A stretch of DNA of 64,000 bases. Origin: Piromyces finnis finn (Eukaryota; Fungi; Neocallimastigomycota). Shown piece after piece: positions 2,348-14,201 of the stretch; positions within the stretch are counted from its first letter, which is position 1, and each line of letters starts with the position of its first letter. The DNA lies in contig MCFH01000041.1 in NCBI GenBank assembly GCA_002104945.1, positions 62,001-126,000 of the forward strand, read 5' to 3'. The notes under the pieces are model-generated. The model worked only from the letters and a program-made list of their open reading frames with translations, had not been told where the DNA came from and did no database searches. Both the position numbers and the translations under genes were made by a program.

Positions 2348-4053
2348 ATGGCAAAAATAACAATAATACATATAATACAAAAAGTTTTTATTTTATTATT
2401 AACTTTAACATTTGTTCAAGCTGAAAAGACAGCATTCATACAAATTACAAATTTTAATGGAGGAAATTCTGTAACACCAGGTAAATTTACATAAATCGAA
2501 TAATTTTTTTTTTATATATTTAAATATTTTATATTTTAATTTAATTTTAATATTTATTAACATAATATAAAAATGAAAAAAAAAATAAAATATAAATGAA
2601 AATGTCAGGACAAAGTATATCATTTAAATTTAAAATAATTCACACACCTTCTCCAGAAGATAATTCATTTGATTTAGTATTAAAAAATGATAGTAATACT
2701 GTTTTTGCAAAATTGATTACTGTAAGTAGTGATGATTATCAATTTAATAAAGACAATGAATACAAAGTTGAAAATGTTATTATTCCTAGTGTTTCAGATG
2801 GTAAATATAAATTATATGGCTATGTTGGTAATGACAAAGTATCAGAATCATATTCAGTATCTGTTAAAACTGCAAAAATAACAACAAAAGAAGCAATTAT
2901 AACTATTACAACTAAATCTATAGAACCTGTAAAGACTTCTGCTACTTCACAACCTTCTGGAACACCAAAACCTTCGGAGTCGATCAATCCTGAAAAATCG
3001 GAAAATACAAGTATATCATTTTTATTTTAATATTATTTTTATTAAATTTATTAATAGTAAAAAAAATTGAACTAGCCTTTATAATAGTTATTAAAAATAT
3101 AAATATAATATTAAAATTATATATAAAAAATAGTTATTACTTCAAATTCAACACAGCCAAATATATCAATAAGTGGTGAATATAATAATGGAAACTCAAA
3201 CTCTAGCTTCAATTGGAAAACATTTAATTGGAAAAGTGCTATTATAGTTGGATCAATTATTTTAGTTATATTAATTATATTTGGAATATTACTTTATTGT
3301 TGTATAAAGGATTCTAAAAGAAAAAGAGATGATAGTATTTATAAATTACCACCAGCTGTTTCGGAGCCACATCTTGTCTCTTCTAGCTCACCAATTAAAG
3401 CAATTCCGCTTCAATATAAAAATAATATCAATAATATAAATATAAATGAAAATAAGTTCTCCTCACCAATTATATCACCAATTGTTCATTCAAATTCTAA
3501 TTACAGCGATATATATAACCAGGAAACCCAGGGTTTAACGCAAACAACAAAAGTAAACAATATAGCAACGCCTGCAAATGCTTACGTTCGTGATACTATT
3601 TATTCAAATAACTCAGCATATATATCACATGATTCAATTGCACCAGAAGATGATATGTCAAGTCCATCCCCAAGTTATTATTTCCAAGTATTTAAACCAC
3701 ATCAAGTATATCGTGTACTTTATGACTTTGAACCTTCATTGGCAGATGAAATGGCAATTCAAGCCGGTGATATTGTAAGAACAGAGGAAACTTTTGAAGA
3801 TGGTTGGGCTTATGGTATCAATATGTCAACAGGAAAGAAAGGAACTTTCCCAATGAATTGTCTTGAAGATGATTTCGCTACAGATGCAGATTCAAGGTCT
3901 GCTGTTTCTGAACGTTCTCAATCTCATAACCGCCGTACCTCTTCATTACCAAATAATCAAAATTCACAAATAATTCAGATGATGTTGGATAATAATAGTA
4001 ATAACAATAGCCAAAGCTTTCAAAAATCATATTATACATCACAAGGTATATAG
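2348..4053 (+). CDS. Type-I membrane protein with C-terminal SH3 domain (Fus1-like architecture), 484 aa; exons 2348-2480, 2609-3010, 3134-4053
   Basis: N-terminal signal peptide MAKITIIHIIQKVFILLLTLTFVQA; two GT-AG introns join the ORF pieces in frame; S/T/P-rich stalk; TM segment AIIVGSIILVILIIFGILLYCCI followed by KDSKRKR; SH3 motif VLYDFEPSLADEMAIQAGD..DGWAYG..KGTFPMNC. Confidence 0.8.
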
Positions 4054-5903
4054 TATATATAATAATTTTAATGAAATAATAATTTTTAAAGTAATAATTT
4101 ATTAATTTTTTAAAAAAAACATTATTGTAAATATTATATATAGTTAATAATATGAAAGTTTAAAATAAATATTTAAAGAATGTTATCAAGAAATATAATT
4201 TTCGAAATATAATACAAAAGAAGTAAAAATTTCAACATTTGTATTATTCATATCAAATTAATATTCACATAAAATTAATCTCCCCAAAAGAAAAACAAAA
4301 TACATTTCAATTAAATGGAAAAATACTTTTAATTTTTATAATTAAAGTAATTTTGGAATTTATATTAAATCGAAATTTATAAAAATATATACAATATTCA
4401 TTAAACCATTAAAAAGAAGAAATGAAAAGAATATATATTATTATATTATGATTATGCTATTTCATTATTAATTCATATTCATGATTAATAAATTCCAATC
4501 TTTAGAAATTAGATAAAATAGATGAATATAAGTAAAAATATGAAAGTAAAATAAGATATAAAATAATAAAAATAGAAATAATTATGATATATTATATATA
4601 AAACAATTAGTTTCTATTTAATTTTTTAATGAGCTTATTATTAATATAGATTTAATTTTGAATGTTTACTATAGATAAAATACATTAAAAAAAAATGGAA
4701 AAATATTAAAAAATAGGTTTTGATTTAGTTTTATAAAAAAAAAAAAGTATAGAAAAAATGAAAGAAAGAGAAGAATACAGTTTAATTCCCCCTTTTCATG
4801 TACTTGCACTAAAAGTAATAATTGTAAATGGTATTGAATATTAAATAATAATATTTCTAAATAAATACTGATTAAATAATCATTAAATAAATTTTCTTTC
4901 ACCACCATTTTTTTTTTAATTAGAGTAAAAAATTAAAATTTGCCGTTGCGGCTATAAAAATAAAACTTATATAATTGAATAATTATAAAATGTGTTTTAT
5001 TATATATGTGTGCAAAGCAAATAAATTAATAAATAAATAAAAATAAAAATAAAATAATAAAATAAAAAAATAAAAAATAAAATGAAACTAAATCTTTTAA
5101 TATTGATATCATTGTTGTCGTTTACTATTATAATTGTTTTTATTATTTTACAAAAAATTTTGAGAAATATAAATTTACATTTTAAAAATCTTCATACAAA
5201 AAAAAAAAAAAAAAAAAAAAAAAACTAATCTATAATTATAAAATTTCAATTAAATAAAATAAAAACTTTAATTATAAAAAATTAATATAATTATTAAGAA
5301 TAATTTTAAATAAAGTTTATAAACATTTTTTTTTAAAATTTTAAAATATTTATAAATTAAAAGTAATTTTTTTTAATTATTGTATTATAATTGAATTATG
5401 TATTTAAAAAAAGTTTATTTTTCATTTTATTATACTAATTGATATTCAACAAAAAACAATTAAAATATATTCTTTATCATTAAAATATTAATTAATTTAT
5501 TAATGTTTATTTTATGAGAAAATTTTAAATTTACTAATATAGAAAAACAAATAAATAAATTAAAATCATCCCATAATTTCAAAAAAAATAATTAAAGGTT
5601 TTTCCATTTTTTTTATAAAAAAAAAATATAAAAATAAAAACATTATTAAAATAATATATATATAAATATCAAAAAATCGAAGGTATTTTATTTACATTAA
5701 ATATAAAGTTTGAGAAAGGAAATTTTATATAAAAGTTACTTAAAGGAATTAAAAATTATTATTCTTAATTACACCATATAATATATAGTATTAATATAAT
5801 ATTTAAATGTTTATGAGAAGATAATATTTTCATTCTATTTTGAAACGCTATAATTGCAATTTTTAAAAAATAGTTTAAAAAATATTTTATAATTGAAACA
5901 CCA

Positions 5904-10377
<4,474 letters not shown>

Positions 10378-10762: not shown

Positions 10763-11046
10763 AGTTACTACAGAAAATTTAAAAAAGTTAAGATTTAAAT
10801 AATATACCCCATTAAACTTAACATATATTATATTGTATGTTTTATATATTAAAATAATAATAATCATTTAAAATTTTATAAATTTATAATCATATTCAAA
10901 TATTCGAATAATCTTTTGTTGATTATTAATAATTCATATATATTATAAATTATTTACTTTTATTTGTTATTTATTTTATTTTATTTTATTTCTTTTTTTT
11001 TTTTTTTTTTTTAGTATATTTTTTTAAATATAAAGATAAAATCAAT

Positions 11047-12516
11047 ATGCAAAGTTTAGTTACCAATTTCAGTAAATCATTTTTTAAACCAGCAAACTTA
11101 AGATTTTTATCAACAGCTGCTCAAAAATTCCCTTCTTTAATTATATCTGCTAATGAATACATTCCAAAAGGAGCATATGCTGAAAGACAAGCAGAATTCT
11201 TAAAACCTGATTTAAATGCTGTTAAAAAAATTGATGATGTTCTTAAACAAAAAAAGATCGCTGTAAATGCTCACTTTTACATGGATGCAGAATTACAAGG
11301 TATCATTACTGCTTGTCAAACTCCAAATGGTGTTTTCATTGCCGATTCATTAGCAATGGCAGATCAATGTGTTAAACAAGTTAAGTCTGGTTTTAAAAGT
11401 GTAGCAGTCTTGGGTGTTGATTTTATGTCAGCAAATGCTCGTGCAATTTTAGATAAAGAAGGTTTTTCTAATGTTCCAGTCTATAAAACTTCAACAAAGC
11501 CAATTGGTTGTTCTCTTGCCGAAGCAGCTGAAAAGGATGTATATAAATCATACCTTTTAACTGAAAAAAAAAAGGCTGGTAATTCACCAATTGTAAATTT
11601 AATTTACATCAACACTAGTTTACCATCTAAAGCTATGGCTCAAGACATTATTCCAACTATTTCATGTACTTCAGCTAATGTACTTCGTTCTGTTTTACAA
11701 ATTGCTGCCCAAAAACCAGATTGTAAGATTTGCTATGGTCCAGATTCTTACATGGGTAACAATTTAGAAGTTATGTTAAAGCATTTAACCACTCAACCTG
11801 ACTCTGAAATTAAGAAATATCATCCAGCTCATAATCAAAAATCAATTGCTAAACTTTTAAAGAATTTCTCTTACTTTAAGAACGGTAACTGTATTGTTCA
11901 CCATATGTTTGGTGAAAAGGTTGTCAATAATATTCGTGAAAATTATGATGATGCTTATATTACTGCACACTTTGAAGTACCAGGACCAATGTTCCAATTA
12001 GCTATGGAAAAAATCCAAAAGAATTCTGGTACCGTTGGTTCTACTTCAGATATCTTAAATTTCATTATTAACAAGGCTAAATCTACTGATGAATCCTTTA
12101 AGGTTGTATTAGGTACTGAATCTGGTATGATTACAAAACTTTCACAAATGATTCAAAAGACTTTAAAAGAACATGGTAGTAAGAACCAAACTATTGAAGT
12201 TATTTTCCCAGTTTCAAATGATGCTGTCACTGTTTCAAATGATAAGAAATTAGGTATTGTTCCAGGTGTTTGTGGTGGAGAAGGATGTTCAACTGAAGGT
12301 GGTTGTGCTTCTTGCCCATACATGAAAATGAACACTATTGATGGTCTTCTTCATGTTGTTGAAATGCTCAATGAAGGTAAAACTGAAGAACTTAAAGAAT
12401 ATGAAGTCAAAAACAAGATTTCTGATAATATTGTTGATAAAGCTTTGAAGCCAATTTTTGCAATGAGATATTTCCAAAAGAACAAAGAATTCCCAGAATG
12501 GGCTTTCCAATCATAA
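11047..12516 (+). CDS. nadA: Quinolinate synthase ([4Fe-4S] NadA), intronless, with N-terminal organellar presequence
   Basis: 489-aa ORF with NadA motifs AHFYMD, ADSL, LGVDFM, GCSLA (Cys1), CIVHH (Cys2), AHFE, GST, GTESG, GGCASCPYMKMN (Cys3). Confidence 0.9.
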   Translation: MQSLVTNFSKSFFKPANLRFLSTAAQKFPSLIISANEYIPKGAYAERQAEFLKPDLNAVKKIDDVLKQKKIAVNAHFYMDAELQGIITACQTPNGVFIADSLAMADQCVKQVKSGFKSVAVLGVDFMSANARAILDKEGFSNVPVYKTSTKPIGCSLAEAAEKDVYKSYLLTEKKKAGNSPIVNLIYINTSLPSKAMAQDIIPTISCTSANVLRSVLQIAAQKPDCKICYGPDSYMGNNLEVMLKHLTTQPDSEIKKYHPAHNQKSIAKLLKNFSYFKNGNCIVHHMFGEKVVNNIRENYDDAYITAHFEVPGPMFQLAMEKIQKNSGTVGSTSDILNFIINKAKSTDESFKVVLGTESGMITKLSQMIQKTLKEHGSKNQTIEVIFPVSNDAVTVSNDKKLGIVPGVCGGEGCSTEGGCASCPYMKMNTIDGLLHVVEMLNEGKTEELKEYEVKNKISDNIVDKALKPIFAMRYFQKNKEFPEWAFQS

Positions 12517-13349: not shown

Positions 13350-14201
13350 ATGAATGATATTTCACTCTCAGCAATTACTGGTGCCTTTGATCCAGGACCA
13401 ACAGTTCAATTAAAAGAATTAGAAAGTGATCATATTAAATTTTCTTTATCAAATGTTGATCTTAGTGTTGCCAATGGTATTAGAAGAGCAATGATTGCAG
13501 ATGTACCAACAATGGCAATCGATTTAGTTGAAATCGAAACCAATACAACAGTATTAACTGATGAATTCATTGCACATAGATTAGGTCTAATTCCTTTAAC
13601 AAGCACAGATGTAGATAAGAATTTTGCTTATAGTAGAGAATGTAATTGCTCAGATTATTGTAATTTATGTAGTGTTGAATTAAATTTAAATGTCAAATGT
13701 ACTGAAAATAGAACAATGGAAGTAACTAGTAATGATTTAATTAGTCAAAATCCAGATATTGTTCCAGTTATTACTGACAAGGATGATCGTGGCATTATTA
13801 TTGCAAAAATGAGACAAGGACAAGAATTAAAATTAAAATGTATTGCAAAAAAAGGAACAGGCAAAGAACATGCTAAATGGTCACCAGTTTGTGGTGTAGG
13901 TTTTGATTATGATCCATATAATAAATTAAAACATACAACATACTGGGTTGAAGATGATGAAAAGGCTGAATGGCCTTTAACTGAAAATTCTAATGAAGAA
14001 CCACCACCTGTTGAAGGCGAGCCATTTGACTACAACGCAGTTCCCAATAAATTTTATTATAGATTTGAAACAACAGGTTCAATGGAAGCAAAAGATATTG
14101 TATTATCATCTCTTGATATATTGCAAAATAAATTAGATGAATTAAGAAATGAATTAAGAAAAGAACAAAGTATGAACCAACAACAAGATCAAATGTATTA
14201 A
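13350..14201 (+). CDS. RPB3: RNA polymerase II subunit RPB3, intronless
   Basis: ANGIRRAMIADVPTMAID, DEFIAHRLGLIPL, Zn cluster CNCSDYCNLC, AKKGTGKEHAKWSP, DYDPYNKLKHT. Confidence 0.95.
   Translation: MNDISLSAITGAFDPGPTVQLKELESDHIKFSLSNVDLSVANGIRRAMIADVPTMAIDLVEIETNTTVLTDEFIAHRLGLIPLTSTDVDKNFAYSRECNCSDYCNLCSVELNLNVKCTENRTMEVTSNDLISQNPDIVPVITDKDDRGIIIAKMRQGQELKLKCIAKKGTGKEHAKWSPVCGVGFDYDPYNKLKHTTYWVEDDEKAEWPLTENSNEEPPPVEGEPFDYNAVPNKFYYRFETTGSMEAKDIVLSSLDILQNKLDELRNELRKEQSMNQQQDQMY

What the first reader, a model, noticed from the sequence alone, without database searches (positions are those of the whole stretch)
11047..12516. NadA quinolinate synthase with a hydrogenosome-type presequence: aspartate-route NAD synthesis in a fungus
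Seen: intronless 489-aa NadA with all three Fe-S cysteines. The first ~25 residues (MQSLVTNFSKSFFKPANLRFLSTAAQK) lack acidic residues, are rich in S/F/K/R, and have an RF/LS-type cleavage context. Motifs PKGAYAERQAEFL and GEGCSTEGGCASCPYMKMN match, from memory, the long plant-plastid/bacterial NadA type, without the SufE domain of plant QS. Known: typical fungi make quinolinate by the O2-dependent kynurenine pathway, while NadB+NadA is the bacterial/plant route and NadA needs an O2-labile [4Fe-4S] cluster. Inference: a laterally acquired, fully domesticated gene (native codon bias, added presequence) targeted to the anoxic organelle where ISC Fe-S assembly occurs. HGT of this pathway into gut fungi may already be reported; the organellar targeting is the part worth testing.
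Basis: partly seen in the sequence, partly recalled or inferred. Interest (0 to 1): 0.7.

Follow-up and report, generated by a model that had tools for sequence, protein, structure and literature searches.

The report
Gut fungus NadA with organelle leader
This is the already published, bacterial-type quinolinate synthase (NadA) gene that lets the anaerobic gut fungus Piromyces finnis make NAD without oxygen; its one little-studied feature is a short N-terminal leader that looks like a hydrogenosome import signal, which its partner enzymes NadB and NadC lack.

Summary
Window 11047-12516 (+) is an intronless 489-aa NadA with all three [4Fe-4S] cysteines (C155, C282, C423), sitting next to an Rpb3 gene and showing native base composition.

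The genome is Piromyces finnis and NadA is single-copy, so this is PfnadA. Its horizontal acquisition (Murphy 2019) and its function, shown by yeast bna2 complementation together with PfnadB (Perli 2021), are already published.

The N-terminal 27 residues are a real, translated, eukaryote-only extension:
- Myxococcota homologs start 2-5 residues before the invariant FPS block.
- AlphaFold leaves residues 1-25 unstructured.
- All eight gut-fungal orthologs lack acidic residues there and keep an R-x-[F/Y/C]-L-[S/V]-T motif. In seven of them it reads R-[F/Y]-L-S, like the RFLS of this genome's hydrogenosomal SCS-beta presequence.

DeepLoc-based Dataset S3 of Pratt 2024 already lists nadA among predicted hydrogenosomal proteins.

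Against a simple organellar pathway, NadB (about 75% identical to and colinear with Myxococcaceae NadB), NadC and TPI have no leader.

Verdict: a known gene and pathway. Hydrogenosomal import of NadA is plausible (about 0.6) but unproven, and it would split the pathway across the organelle membrane.

The parts
11047..12516 (+). nadA coding sequence (489 codons plus stop), intronless; the single NadA gene of the genome (PfnadA)
   Evidence: ORF; Pfam NadA; single six-frame hit in the whole genome; orthologous poly(A) mRNA contigs with in-frame stops upstream of the same ATG.
11047..11127 (+). N-terminal extension, residues 1-27: putative hydrogenosomal (mitochondrial-type) matrix presequence
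   Evidence: Absent from Myxococcota homologs, which start 2-5 residues before F28. Residues 1-25 have pLDDT below 50 and no secondary structure. There is no D/E in any of 8 gut-fungal orthologs. Pairwise identity is 65% here against 86% in the mature part.
11101..11112 (+). R19-F20-L21-S22: predicted processing site. It reads as Arg at -2 (cut after F20) or at -3 (cut after L21)
   Evidence: R-[F/Y]-L-S is kept in 7 of the 8 gut-fungal orthologs (the eighth has RCLV), making it the best-conserved part of the leader. SCS-beta of this genome has the same RFLS tetrapeptide. NFS1 has RQFS and the Hsp60 genes have RNYS/RNYA. The cleavage itself is inferred, not shown.
11128..12513 (+). Mature quinolinate synthase, residues 28-489, colinear with bacterial long-type NadA from the invariant F-P-S block onward
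   Evidence: Alignment A1. The AlphaFold model has pTM 0.80 and the ordered fold begins at strand 30-33. Active-site motifs AHFYMD, DSL, YINTS, TSAN, AHFEVP and GSTS align to T. maritima NadA.
11509..11511 (+). Cys155, first [4Fe-4S] ligand
   Evidence: Aligned to the first ligand cysteine of T. maritima NadA; invariant in A1.
11890..11892 (+). Cys282, second [4Fe-4S] ligand
   Evidence: Aligned to the NGHCPVH cysteine of T. maritima NadA; invariant in A1.
12286..12315 (+). C414-x5-C420-x2-C423 motif; Cys423 is the third [4Fe-4S] ligand
   Evidence: C423 aligns to the AVCVNMK cysteine of T. maritima NadA. All three cysteines are invariant. The preceding loop 395-419 has low confidence without the cluster.

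Best explanation
The gene is PfnadA, the single quinolinate synthase gene of Piromyces finnis. It is a long-type [4Fe-4S] NadA of bacterial (Myxococcota-like) ancestry. [quoted passage not shown] This part is shown here and in the literature.

The inferred part concerns the leader. After transfer the gene gained a leader of about 21-27 residues that most likely acts as a mitochondrial-type presequence. It would direct the protein, or at least part of the pool, into the hydrogenosome matrix. There the processing peptidase would cut at R19-F20(-L21), leaving an enzyme that starts 6-7 residues before the bacterial N-terminus, and the ISC machinery would insert the oxygen-labile cluster. NadB and NadC stay in the cytosol, so substrates and product would have to cross the organelle membrane, or part of the NadA pool would have to act outside.
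For: Identity and function:
- ORF, Pfam match and PDB alignment; invariant ligand cysteines; single copy.
- The genome is P. finnis: 56,455,805 bases in 232 contigs, with C112 at 1,961,624 bases, matching the published 56.46 Mbp, 232 contigs and 1.96-Mb scaffold.
- Perli 2021 showed that P. finnis nadA plus nadB complement yeast bna2 aerobically and anaerobically. Murphy 2019 reported the HGT.
- NadB is about 75% identical to Myxococcaceae NadB. NadC is present. No kynureninase, IDO or 3-HAO was found.

Leader:
- Absent from bacterial homologs.
- Translated: mRNA contigs of orthologs carry in-frame stops 3-23 codons upstream and no upstream ATG.
- Unstructured in the AlphaFold model.
- No acidic residue in any of 8 orthologs despite only 65% identity, with R-[F/Y]-L-S kept in 7 of 8.
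- Same motif class as SCS-beta (RFLS), NFS1, Hsp60 and IscU of this genome.
- M16 peptidase loci on C167 and C112 with MPP-like N-terminal regions are present.
- 0 of 117 background ORFs share its composition profile and only 2 of 117 have the R-3 motif.
- Only 1 of 117 background ORFs reaches its score on a composition model trained on the markers alone.
- DeepLoc 2.0 Dataset S3 of Pratt 2024 lists nadA, but not nadB or nadC, among predicted hydrogenosomal proteins.
- There is no internal Met before M79, so no leaderless isoform can arise from a downstream AUG.
Against: - No experimental localisation exists in anything I could read.
- NadB starts directly at the FAD-binding motif in this genome and in transcript-derived orthologs, colinear with bacterial NadB. 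NadC and the single TPI also lack leaders. An organellar NadA would therefore be separated from the source of its short-lived substrate iminoaspartate (instability is established knowledge, not tested here) and from cytosolic DHAP.
- The composition-only score is a weak classifier: NadC ranks 5/117, bacterial NadA N-termini 3-4/117, and Hsp60b only 18/117 when left out.
- My rule thresholds were set after seeing NadA.
- DeepLoc reads the same N-terminal features, so it is not independent biology, and the strain shading in Dataset S3 is lost.
- Perli's complementation worked with a leaderless NadB, so it does not require organellar NadA.
Confidence: 0.6

Rival explanations
1. NadA is purely cytosolic. 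It works beside cytosolic NadB, NadC, fumarate and DHAP, and receives its cluster from the cytosolic CIA system. The N-terminal extension is not an import signal; it would be a neutral or otherwise functional leader that arose when an upstream ATG was adopted after transfer.
For: - NadB, NadC and TPI have no leader.
- Metabolic logic favours one compartment, because iminoaspartate is unstable and DHAP is glycolytic (established knowledge).
- In an AT-rich genome, N-termini without acidic residues are not rare: 21 of 117 background ORFs.
- The composition score separates poorly.
- Perli 2021 assumed cytosolic function in yeast.
Against: - This does not explain why the leader stays free of acidic residues in all 8 orthologs, or why R-[F/Y]-L-S sits at a fixed distance from the mature domain in 7 of 8 while the rest of the leader drifts.
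- It does not explain the identity of that motif with the SCS-beta presequence.
- DeepLoc calls nadA mitochondrial.
- No C-terminal [LIM]-[DES]-[WF] CIA-client tripeptide (motif recalled from memory); the protein ends in AFQS.
Confidence: 0.3
2. The gut-fungal NadA was not taken directly from a myxobacterium. It shares a eukaryotic ancestor with the stramenopile (oomycete) NadA through eukaryote-to-eukaryote transfer, and its organelle leader was inherited, not newly gained.
For: - In the unrooted tree all 90 bacterial rows lie on one side of a branch (SH-aLRT 91), with the gut-fungal and stramenopile clans on the other.
- Both eukaryotic groups carry acid-poor leaders. Saprolegniales leaders end R-x-F-S-[SA]-x-W-[ED]-K-P-FPS, with the Arg at nearly the same distance from FPS as in gut fungi.
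Against: - The tree has no outgroup, holds only the top 120 hits, has a gut-fungal stem of 2.04 changes per column, and carries compositional-bias warnings for exactly these rows, so long-branch attraction is likely.
- The leaders cannot be aligned beyond the cleavage context.
- NadB clearly comes from Myxococcaceae at about 75% identity, whereas Ternes 2014 puts stramenopile NadB with Spirochaeta/Halobacteria. The two lineages therefore assembled the pathway differently.
Confidence: 0.15
3. The ORF is bacterial contamination or an annotation artefact.
For: None found.
Against: - GC is 0.32 and GC3 0.19, like native genes.
- It is flanked by a eukaryotic Rpb3 gene on a large contig.
- Orthologs occur as polyadenylated mRNAs in several gut fungi and as protein in a proteome.
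Confidence: 0.01

Closest known systems
PfNadA of Piromyces finnis (Perli et al. 2021, mBio, PMC8262920; HGT reported by Murphy et al. 2019)
   Same: Almost certainly the same gene. The genome is P. finnis and holds one NadA locus. It has the same pathway role and the published functional complementation of yeast bna2 with PfNadB.
   Different: The paper treats the protein as cytosolic in yeast and never mentions its N-terminal leader or the hydrogenosome. I could not compare sequences letter by letter, because the supplements hold no protein sequence.
Long-type NadA of Myxococcota / Polyangiales
   Same: 47-50% identity over 93% of the length. It has the same FPS start block, the same three ligand cysteines plus the C-x5-C-x2-C motif, and the same insertions relative to the 300-aa Thermotoga type.
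   Different: The bacterial proteins have only 2-5 residues before the FPS block, high GC, and a longer, different C-terminal tail.
Arabidopsis quinolinate synthase (SufE3), plastid-targeted
   Same: A eukaryotic, organelle-targeted NadA of the same broad long type, next to Deltaproteobacteria in Ternes 2014. Its cluster is supplied by the organelle's own Fe-S system.
   Different: [quoted passage not shown] The early steps of NAD synthesis from aspartate occur in the plastid (Katoh 2006, cited). Here there is no SufE domain, the leader is mitochondrial-type, and only NadA has it.
Oomycete / stramenopile NadA (e.g. Pythium, Phytophthora, Saprolegnia)
   Same: 47-54% identity, and they also carry an acid-poor, Arg-rich N-terminal extension before the FPS block.
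   Different: The extension is longer (25-47 residues) and cannot be aligned. They form a separate clan in the tree. Stramenopile mitochondria hold part of glycolysis (title and abstract of PMC6198282), so DHAP is plausibly at hand there, which is not known for gut-fungal hydrogenosomes.
Presequence of hydrogenosomal succinyl-CoA synthetase beta of gut fungi
   Same: In this genome its leader ends KRFLSV, the same RFLS as NadA. It is of similar length, has no acidic residues and the same 11-residue hydrophobic moment of 0.59.
   Different: SCS-beta is an ancestral mitochondrial protein with experimentally supported localisation (Dacks 2006, cited; the 27-residue cleaved leader is from my memory of Brondijk 1996). 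NadA is a bacterial acquisition with no localisation data.

Membership tests
Quinolinate synthase NadA (Pfam PF02445) | Significant match to the family model over the whole catalytic region | tested here: met
   109.2 bits against a cut-off of 27, covering residues 61-470 and model positions 2-290 of 295.
Quinolinate synthase NadA (Pfam PF02445) | Three conserved cysteines that bind the [4Fe-4S] cluster | tested here: met
   C155, C282 and C423 align to the three ligand cysteines of T. maritima NadA and are invariant in 22 sequences.
Quinolinate synthase NadA (Pfam PF02445) | Substrate-binding and catalytic motifs (H-x-Y, DSL, Y-x-N-[ST], TSAN, H-x-E, GST) | tested here: met
   AHFYMD at 75, DSLAM at 100, YINTS at 187, CTSAN at 207, AHFEVP at 307 and GSTS at 331 align with the corresponding 4p3x motifs.
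Quinolinate synthase NadA (Pfam PF02445) | Quinolinate synthase activity | not testable with these tools
   Reported for P. finnis nadA plus nadB by complementation of yeast bna2 (Perli 2021).
NCBIfam nadA equivalogs (TIGR00550, NF006878 and others) | Score above the curated equivalog cut-off | tested here: not met
   109.5 bits against 262.9, and lower for the other models. These models do not represent the divergent long type well, so this does not argue against NadA function.
Plant SufE-quinolinate synthase fusion (SufE3 type) | N-terminal SufE domain | tested here: not met
   Pfam finds only NadA. Just 27 residues precede the catalytic body.
Cleavable mitochondrial/hydrogenosomal matrix presequence | N-terminal extension relative to prokaryotic homologs that lies outside the fold | tested here: met
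   Bacterial homologs have 2-5 residues before FPS against 24-27 in gut fungi. Residues 1-25 have pLDDT below 50.
Cleavable mitochondrial/hydrogenosomal matrix presequence | No acidic residues; enriched in basic and hydroxylated residues; amphipathic potential | tested here: met
   0 D/E, 4 K/R and 6 S/T in 27 residues, and 0 D/E in all 8 orthologs. The hydrophobic moment is 0.59, as in SCS-beta, against 0.23 for NadB and 0.34 for NadC. The composition-only ranking is only moderately discriminating.
Cleavable mitochondrial/hydrogenosomal matrix presequence | Arginine at -2 or -3 of a processing site, with the peptidase present | tested here: met
   R19-F20-L21-S22; R-[F/Y]-L-S is kept in 7 of 8 orthologs. 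Only 2 of 117 background ORFs have such a motif. M16 peptidase loci on C167 and C112 have MPP-like N-terminal regions. The rule is as stated in PMC2440562.
Cleavable mitochondrial/hydrogenosomal matrix presequence | Demonstrated import and cleavage | not testable with these tools
   Only a DeepLoc 2.0 prediction exists, in Pratt 2024 Dataset S3. The supplement of the hydrogenosome-fraction proteomics of C. churrovis is not held.
Complete organellar aspartate-to-quinolinate pathway (as in plant plastids) | NadB, and NadC, co-targeted with NadA | tested here: not met
   NadB starts MERKYDFLVIGGG, colinear with bacterial NadB, in this genome and in transcript-derived orthologs. NadC starts in the conserved BNA6-type core. 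Neither is in the DeepLoc hydrogenosome list.

The most novel reading that the evidence does not exclude
Only NadA, not NadB or NadC, is imported into the hydrogenosome, because a bacterial [4Fe-4S] enzyme can be matured and shielded there by the ISC system. This would split a two-step pathway with an unstable intermediate across an organelle membrane. It would require carriers for iminoaspartate (or an alternative source of it), DHAP and quinolinate. It would also mean that the unexpected activity of PfNadA in aerobic yeast arose because its own leader took it into mitochondria, not because it was matured in the cytosol.
Probability: 0.35. Interest if true: 0.55.

Novelty: already known. Interest (0 to 1): 0.3.

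Why it matters
The gene, its bacterial origin and its role in oxygen-independent NAD synthesis are established, so the finding adds no new system.

What remains open is cell-biological: where a horizontally acquired, oxygen-labile Fe-S enzyme is matured in an anaerobic eukaryote. If the leader works, it would be a clean example of a bacterial gene being fitted with a hydrogenosomal address after transfer while its pathway partners were not.

It would also give metabolic engineers a simple explanation, and a design rule, for why this NadA works in yeast when cytosolic expression of [4Fe-4S] enzymes usually fails.

Tried and rejected
- **Read laying.** Transcript 5' ends in this strain are therefore not shown. 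Four runs from three studies hold 70-75% of the words of the stretch, as a transcript would, but their kind is only guessed.
- **Contigs encoding this exact protein.** None on record, because the genome's own records are withheld. I used ortholog mRNA contigs instead.
- **Perli 2021 supplements.** No protein sequences, so identity with PfNadA rests on genome identity plus single copy.
- **C. churrovis hydrogenosome proteomics.** The supplement is not held.
- **Wilken 2021 model paper.** No word on NadA localisation.
- **Oomycete NadB N-termini.** The flavoenzyme genes near Saprolegnia NadA are DAO-family, not NadB.
- **Leader copied from the NFS1 gene.** Both start MQSL[VI]TN, but I rejected this: only 21 of 33 coding bases and 41 of 100 overall are identical, which is background for this AT-rich DNA.
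- **Composition-only classifier.** Weak.
- **Class II aldolase lead.** Two loci exist, one in a 495-aa open frame, but the DNA could not be fetched.
- **Spliced genes.** N-termini of SCS-beta, IscU, NFS1, TPI, NadB and NadC were read exon by exon. Exon joins were made by eye and used only in local feature scripts, not in any search.
Full report
**Observation.** The window holds an uninterrupted 489-codon ORF at 11047..12516 on the + strand, in DNA of about 20% GC.
- It matches Pfam NadA at 109 bits against a cut-off of 27, with no other domain.
- It aligns to solved Thermotoga maritima NadA structures.
- By that alignment the cluster ligands are C155, C282 and C423. These and the main active-site motifs are invariant in an alignment of 22 fungal, stramenopile and bacterial sequences.
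- Scores fall below the NCBIfam equivalog cut-offs, because this is the divergent long NadA type.
- An AlphaFold model built on the alignment is confident (pTM 0.80). Its ordered fold starts at strand 30-33, and residues 1-25 are below pLDDT 50.

**Whose gene it is.** The assembly has 56,455,805 bases in 232 contigs, and contig C112 is 1,961,624 bases. This matches the published Piromyces finnis assembly of 56.46 Mbp, 232 contigs and a second scaffold of 1.96 Mbp (PMC5622200).
- A six-frame search finds one NadA locus in the whole genome.
- The next gene downstream is RNA polymerase subunit Rpb3.
- NadA has GC 0.32 and GC3 0.19, against GC3 of 0.10-0.18 for other long open frames of the window.

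It is a resident, fully ameliorated fungal gene.

**What is already known.**
- Murphy et al. 2019 listed NadA and NadB among genes that anaerobic gut fungi acquired horizontally, giving them the bacterial aspartate route to NAD.
- Perli et al. 2021 took the P. finnis NadA and NadB candidates, expressed them in a yeast bna2 deletion strain, and obtained nicotinate prototrophy both aerobically and anaerobically. With one NadA locus in P. finnis, that gene is this one.
- They called it surprising that a [4Fe-4S] enzyme worked in the yeast cytosol. They did not mention its N-terminus or the hydrogenosome.
- Pratt et al. 2024 give Myxococcota as the NadB donor, in both the tortoise-associated and the mammalian gut fungi. 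They also detected NadA and NadB in an A. divisus proteome.

**Rest of the pathway in this genome.**
- NadB lies on C113, split by introns. Its last exon is about 75% identical to L-aspartate oxidases of Corallococcus, Myxococcus and Stigmatella.
- NadC lies on C150 and is of the fungal BNA6 type.
- No kynureninase, IDO or 3-hydroxyanthranilate dioxygenase was found. Only the kynureninase search had a working positive control, so the other two are weak negatives that agree with the literature.

**Phylogeny.** The nearest NadA relatives outside gut fungi, at 47-54% identity, are oomycetes with other stramenopiles and Myxococcota/Polyangiales.
- A quick maximum-likelihood tree of 120 rows gives a gut-fungal clade (support 100) on a very long stem, a stramenopile clan (94) and a bacterial clan (91).
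- Unrooted, this leaves both a direct bacterial origin and a shared eukaryotic origin open.
- The program warns of long branches and deviant composition for exactly the fungal rows, so I draw no conclusion beyond "Myxococcota-like long type". That agrees with Ternes and Schoenknecht 2014 for the stramenopile and plant enzymes.

**The leader.**
- Bacterial homologs begin 2-5 residues before the invariant F28-P29-S30. All eight gut-fungal sequences carry 24-27 extra residues, and stramenopiles carry their own 25-47.
- The extension is translated. Transcript-sized contigs of orthologs from three fungi, several with poly(A) tails, have in-frame stops 3-23 codons upstream of the shared ATG and no upstream in-frame ATG.
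- It evolves faster than the enzyme: 65% mean pairwise identity against 86%. Even so, no ortholog has a single D or E in it, and seven of the eight keep R-[F/Y]-L-S-T just before the mature part; the most divergent has R-C-L-V-T.
- Hydrogenosomal markers of the same genome, read exon by exon, show the same design. SCS-beta ends KRFLSV, NFS1 has RQFS, the two Hsp60 genes have RNYS and RNYA, IscU has KRSYH, and NuoF has KSAFS.
- M16 peptidase loci on C167 and C112, with N-terminal regions that look like the two subunits of the processing peptidase, are present.
- Cleavage at R19-F20 or after L21 would leave an enzyme starting 6-7 residues before the bacterial start.

**How unusual the leader is.**
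- Among 117 first-ATG ORFs of at least 80 residues in 264 kb of this genome, none has the combined profile of no acidic, at least 3 basic and at least 5 Ser/Thr in 25 residues. Only 2 have an R-x-[FYL]-[SA] motif at positions 12-60. I chose those thresholds after seeing NadA.
- A composition score trained on the six markers alone puts NadA above all but 1 of the 117. That score is a weak classifier, however: NadC ranks 5th, bacterial NadA N-termini rank 3rd to 4th, and Hsp60b when left out ranks 18th.
- The weight therefore rests on four things together: the extension itself, its lack of structure, the purged acidic residues and the conserved cleavage motif.
- Independently, Dataset S3 of Pratt et al. 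2024 lists the peptides that DeepLoc 2.0 calls mitochondrial in three gut fungi. It includes "nadA; quinolinate synthase", and includes neither nadB nor nadC. The main text never mentions it, and the cell shading that tells the strains apart is lost.
- The organellar prediction is thus already in print, as one line of a supplement.

**Evidence against a simple organellar pathway.**
- NadB begins MERKYDFLVIGGG, five residues before the glycine-rich FAD motif. An in-frame stop lies 8 codons upstream, followed by more than 600 bp of AT-rich non-coding DNA.
- Transcript-derived orthologs of 535 residues start the same way and are colinear with 529-residue Myxococcaceae NadB.
- NadC starts inside the conserved BNA6 core, and the single TPI gene starts MARKFFVGGNWK.
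- NadA needs iminoaspartate, which is short-lived, and DHAP, which is glycolytic. Both points are established knowledge and were not tested here. An organellar NadA would need carriers for both and for quinolinate, or part of its pool would have to act outside.
- There is no Met between M1 and M79, so a leaderless isoform from a downstream AUG is not available.
- An earlier first-reader note proposes a presequence-bearing class II aldolase in this genome. I found two aldolase loci, one in a 495-residue open frame, but could not fetch the DNA.

**Mechanism and odds.** That this is the functional quinolinate synthase of the oxygen-independent NAD route is as good as certain.
- About 0.6: the leader is a working hydrogenosomal presequence, and at least part of NadA is imported, processed and loaded with its cluster by the ISC system.
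- About 0.3: a purely cytosolic enzyme with a non-targeting leader.
- The remainder: other readings.
- If the leader works, it probably also worked in Perli's yeast. It is known from earlier work, as I recall and not checked here, that a gut-fungal malic enzyme presequence directs import into yeast mitochondria. That would explain the unexpected activity of this Fe-S enzyme under air.

**Verdict.** A correct observation of a known gene in a known pathway. It is contradicted in its simplest form by the leaderless partners, and it is untested by experiment. Interest is modest.

**Limits.**
Those places were not sent to any search tool afterwards.
- Exon joins of comparison genes were made by eye.

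Noticed in passing
G000:C79, minus strand, first exon upstream of 777541 (locus L022): The cysteine desulfurase NFS1 gene opens MQSLITNTLKKS, almost the same first 11 residues as NadA (MQSLVTNFSKS). At the DNA level only 21 of 33 bases match, so this looks like convergence of presequences and not a copied exon.
   Followed up: yes
Tree; alignment A1 columns 1-50: All sampled bacterial NadA fall on one side of a branch (support 91), with gut fungi and stramenopiles on the other. Saprolegniales leaders end R-x-F-S-[SA]-x-W-[ED]-K-P-FPS, with the Arg at nearly the same distance from FPS as in gut fungi. This could mean shared eukaryotic ancestry or convergence; long branches and composition bias prevent a call.
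   Followed up: partly
L053 (ENA metagenome contig k119_232254, 2288 bases, GC 0.34), gene 58-1494: P0022 is a K/N/I-rich, eukaryote-looking NadA with its own short acid-free leader, MRFLSKNLFSTFSNTI, before FPSL. It sits on a very long branch weakly joined to the gut-fungal clade (support 87). Its organism is unknown.
   Followed up: partly
L054 (Saprolegnia parasitica KK583225.1), 2722-4198 (+) and 5127-6497 (-): Two paralogous DAO-family (DadA-like) flavoenzyme genes lie 4-7 kb upstream of the oomycete NadA gene. They are not NadB. Whether they supply an imino acid to NadA is unknown.
   Followed up: no
G000:C113:245827-247601 (-) compared with window 11047-12516: The two transferred genes differ sharply in divergence from their nearest bacteria: NadB is about 75% identical to Myxococcaceae, while NadA is only about 50% identical to any bacterium. 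The causes could be different donors, different transfer times or different rates. NadB has gained introns and NadA has none.
   Followed up: partly
window 10993-11012: A run of 20 T lies 35-54 bases upstream of the NadA start codon. The in-frame reading upstream of the ATG is open for 39 codons but holds no ATG.
   Followed up: no
window 13350-14201 (+) and 10066-10377 (+): Downstream lies an intronless RNA polymerase Rpb3-type subunit (Pfam RNA_pol_A_bac and RNA_pol_L). Upstream lies a 103-residue ORF with no Pfam match.
   Followed up: partly
G000:C2:330911-332206 (+) and G000:C57:134942-136059 (-): There are two class II fructose-bisphosphate aldolase loci. The DNA could not be fetched.
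   Followed up: partly
G000:C172:390627-392491 and G000:C46:471903-474034; G000:C198 and C211; G000:C24 and C210: Hsp60, malic enzyme and SCS-alpha are each present as two loci in this genome. Both Hsp60 copies carry presequences with an R-N-Y-[SA] site.
   Followed up: no
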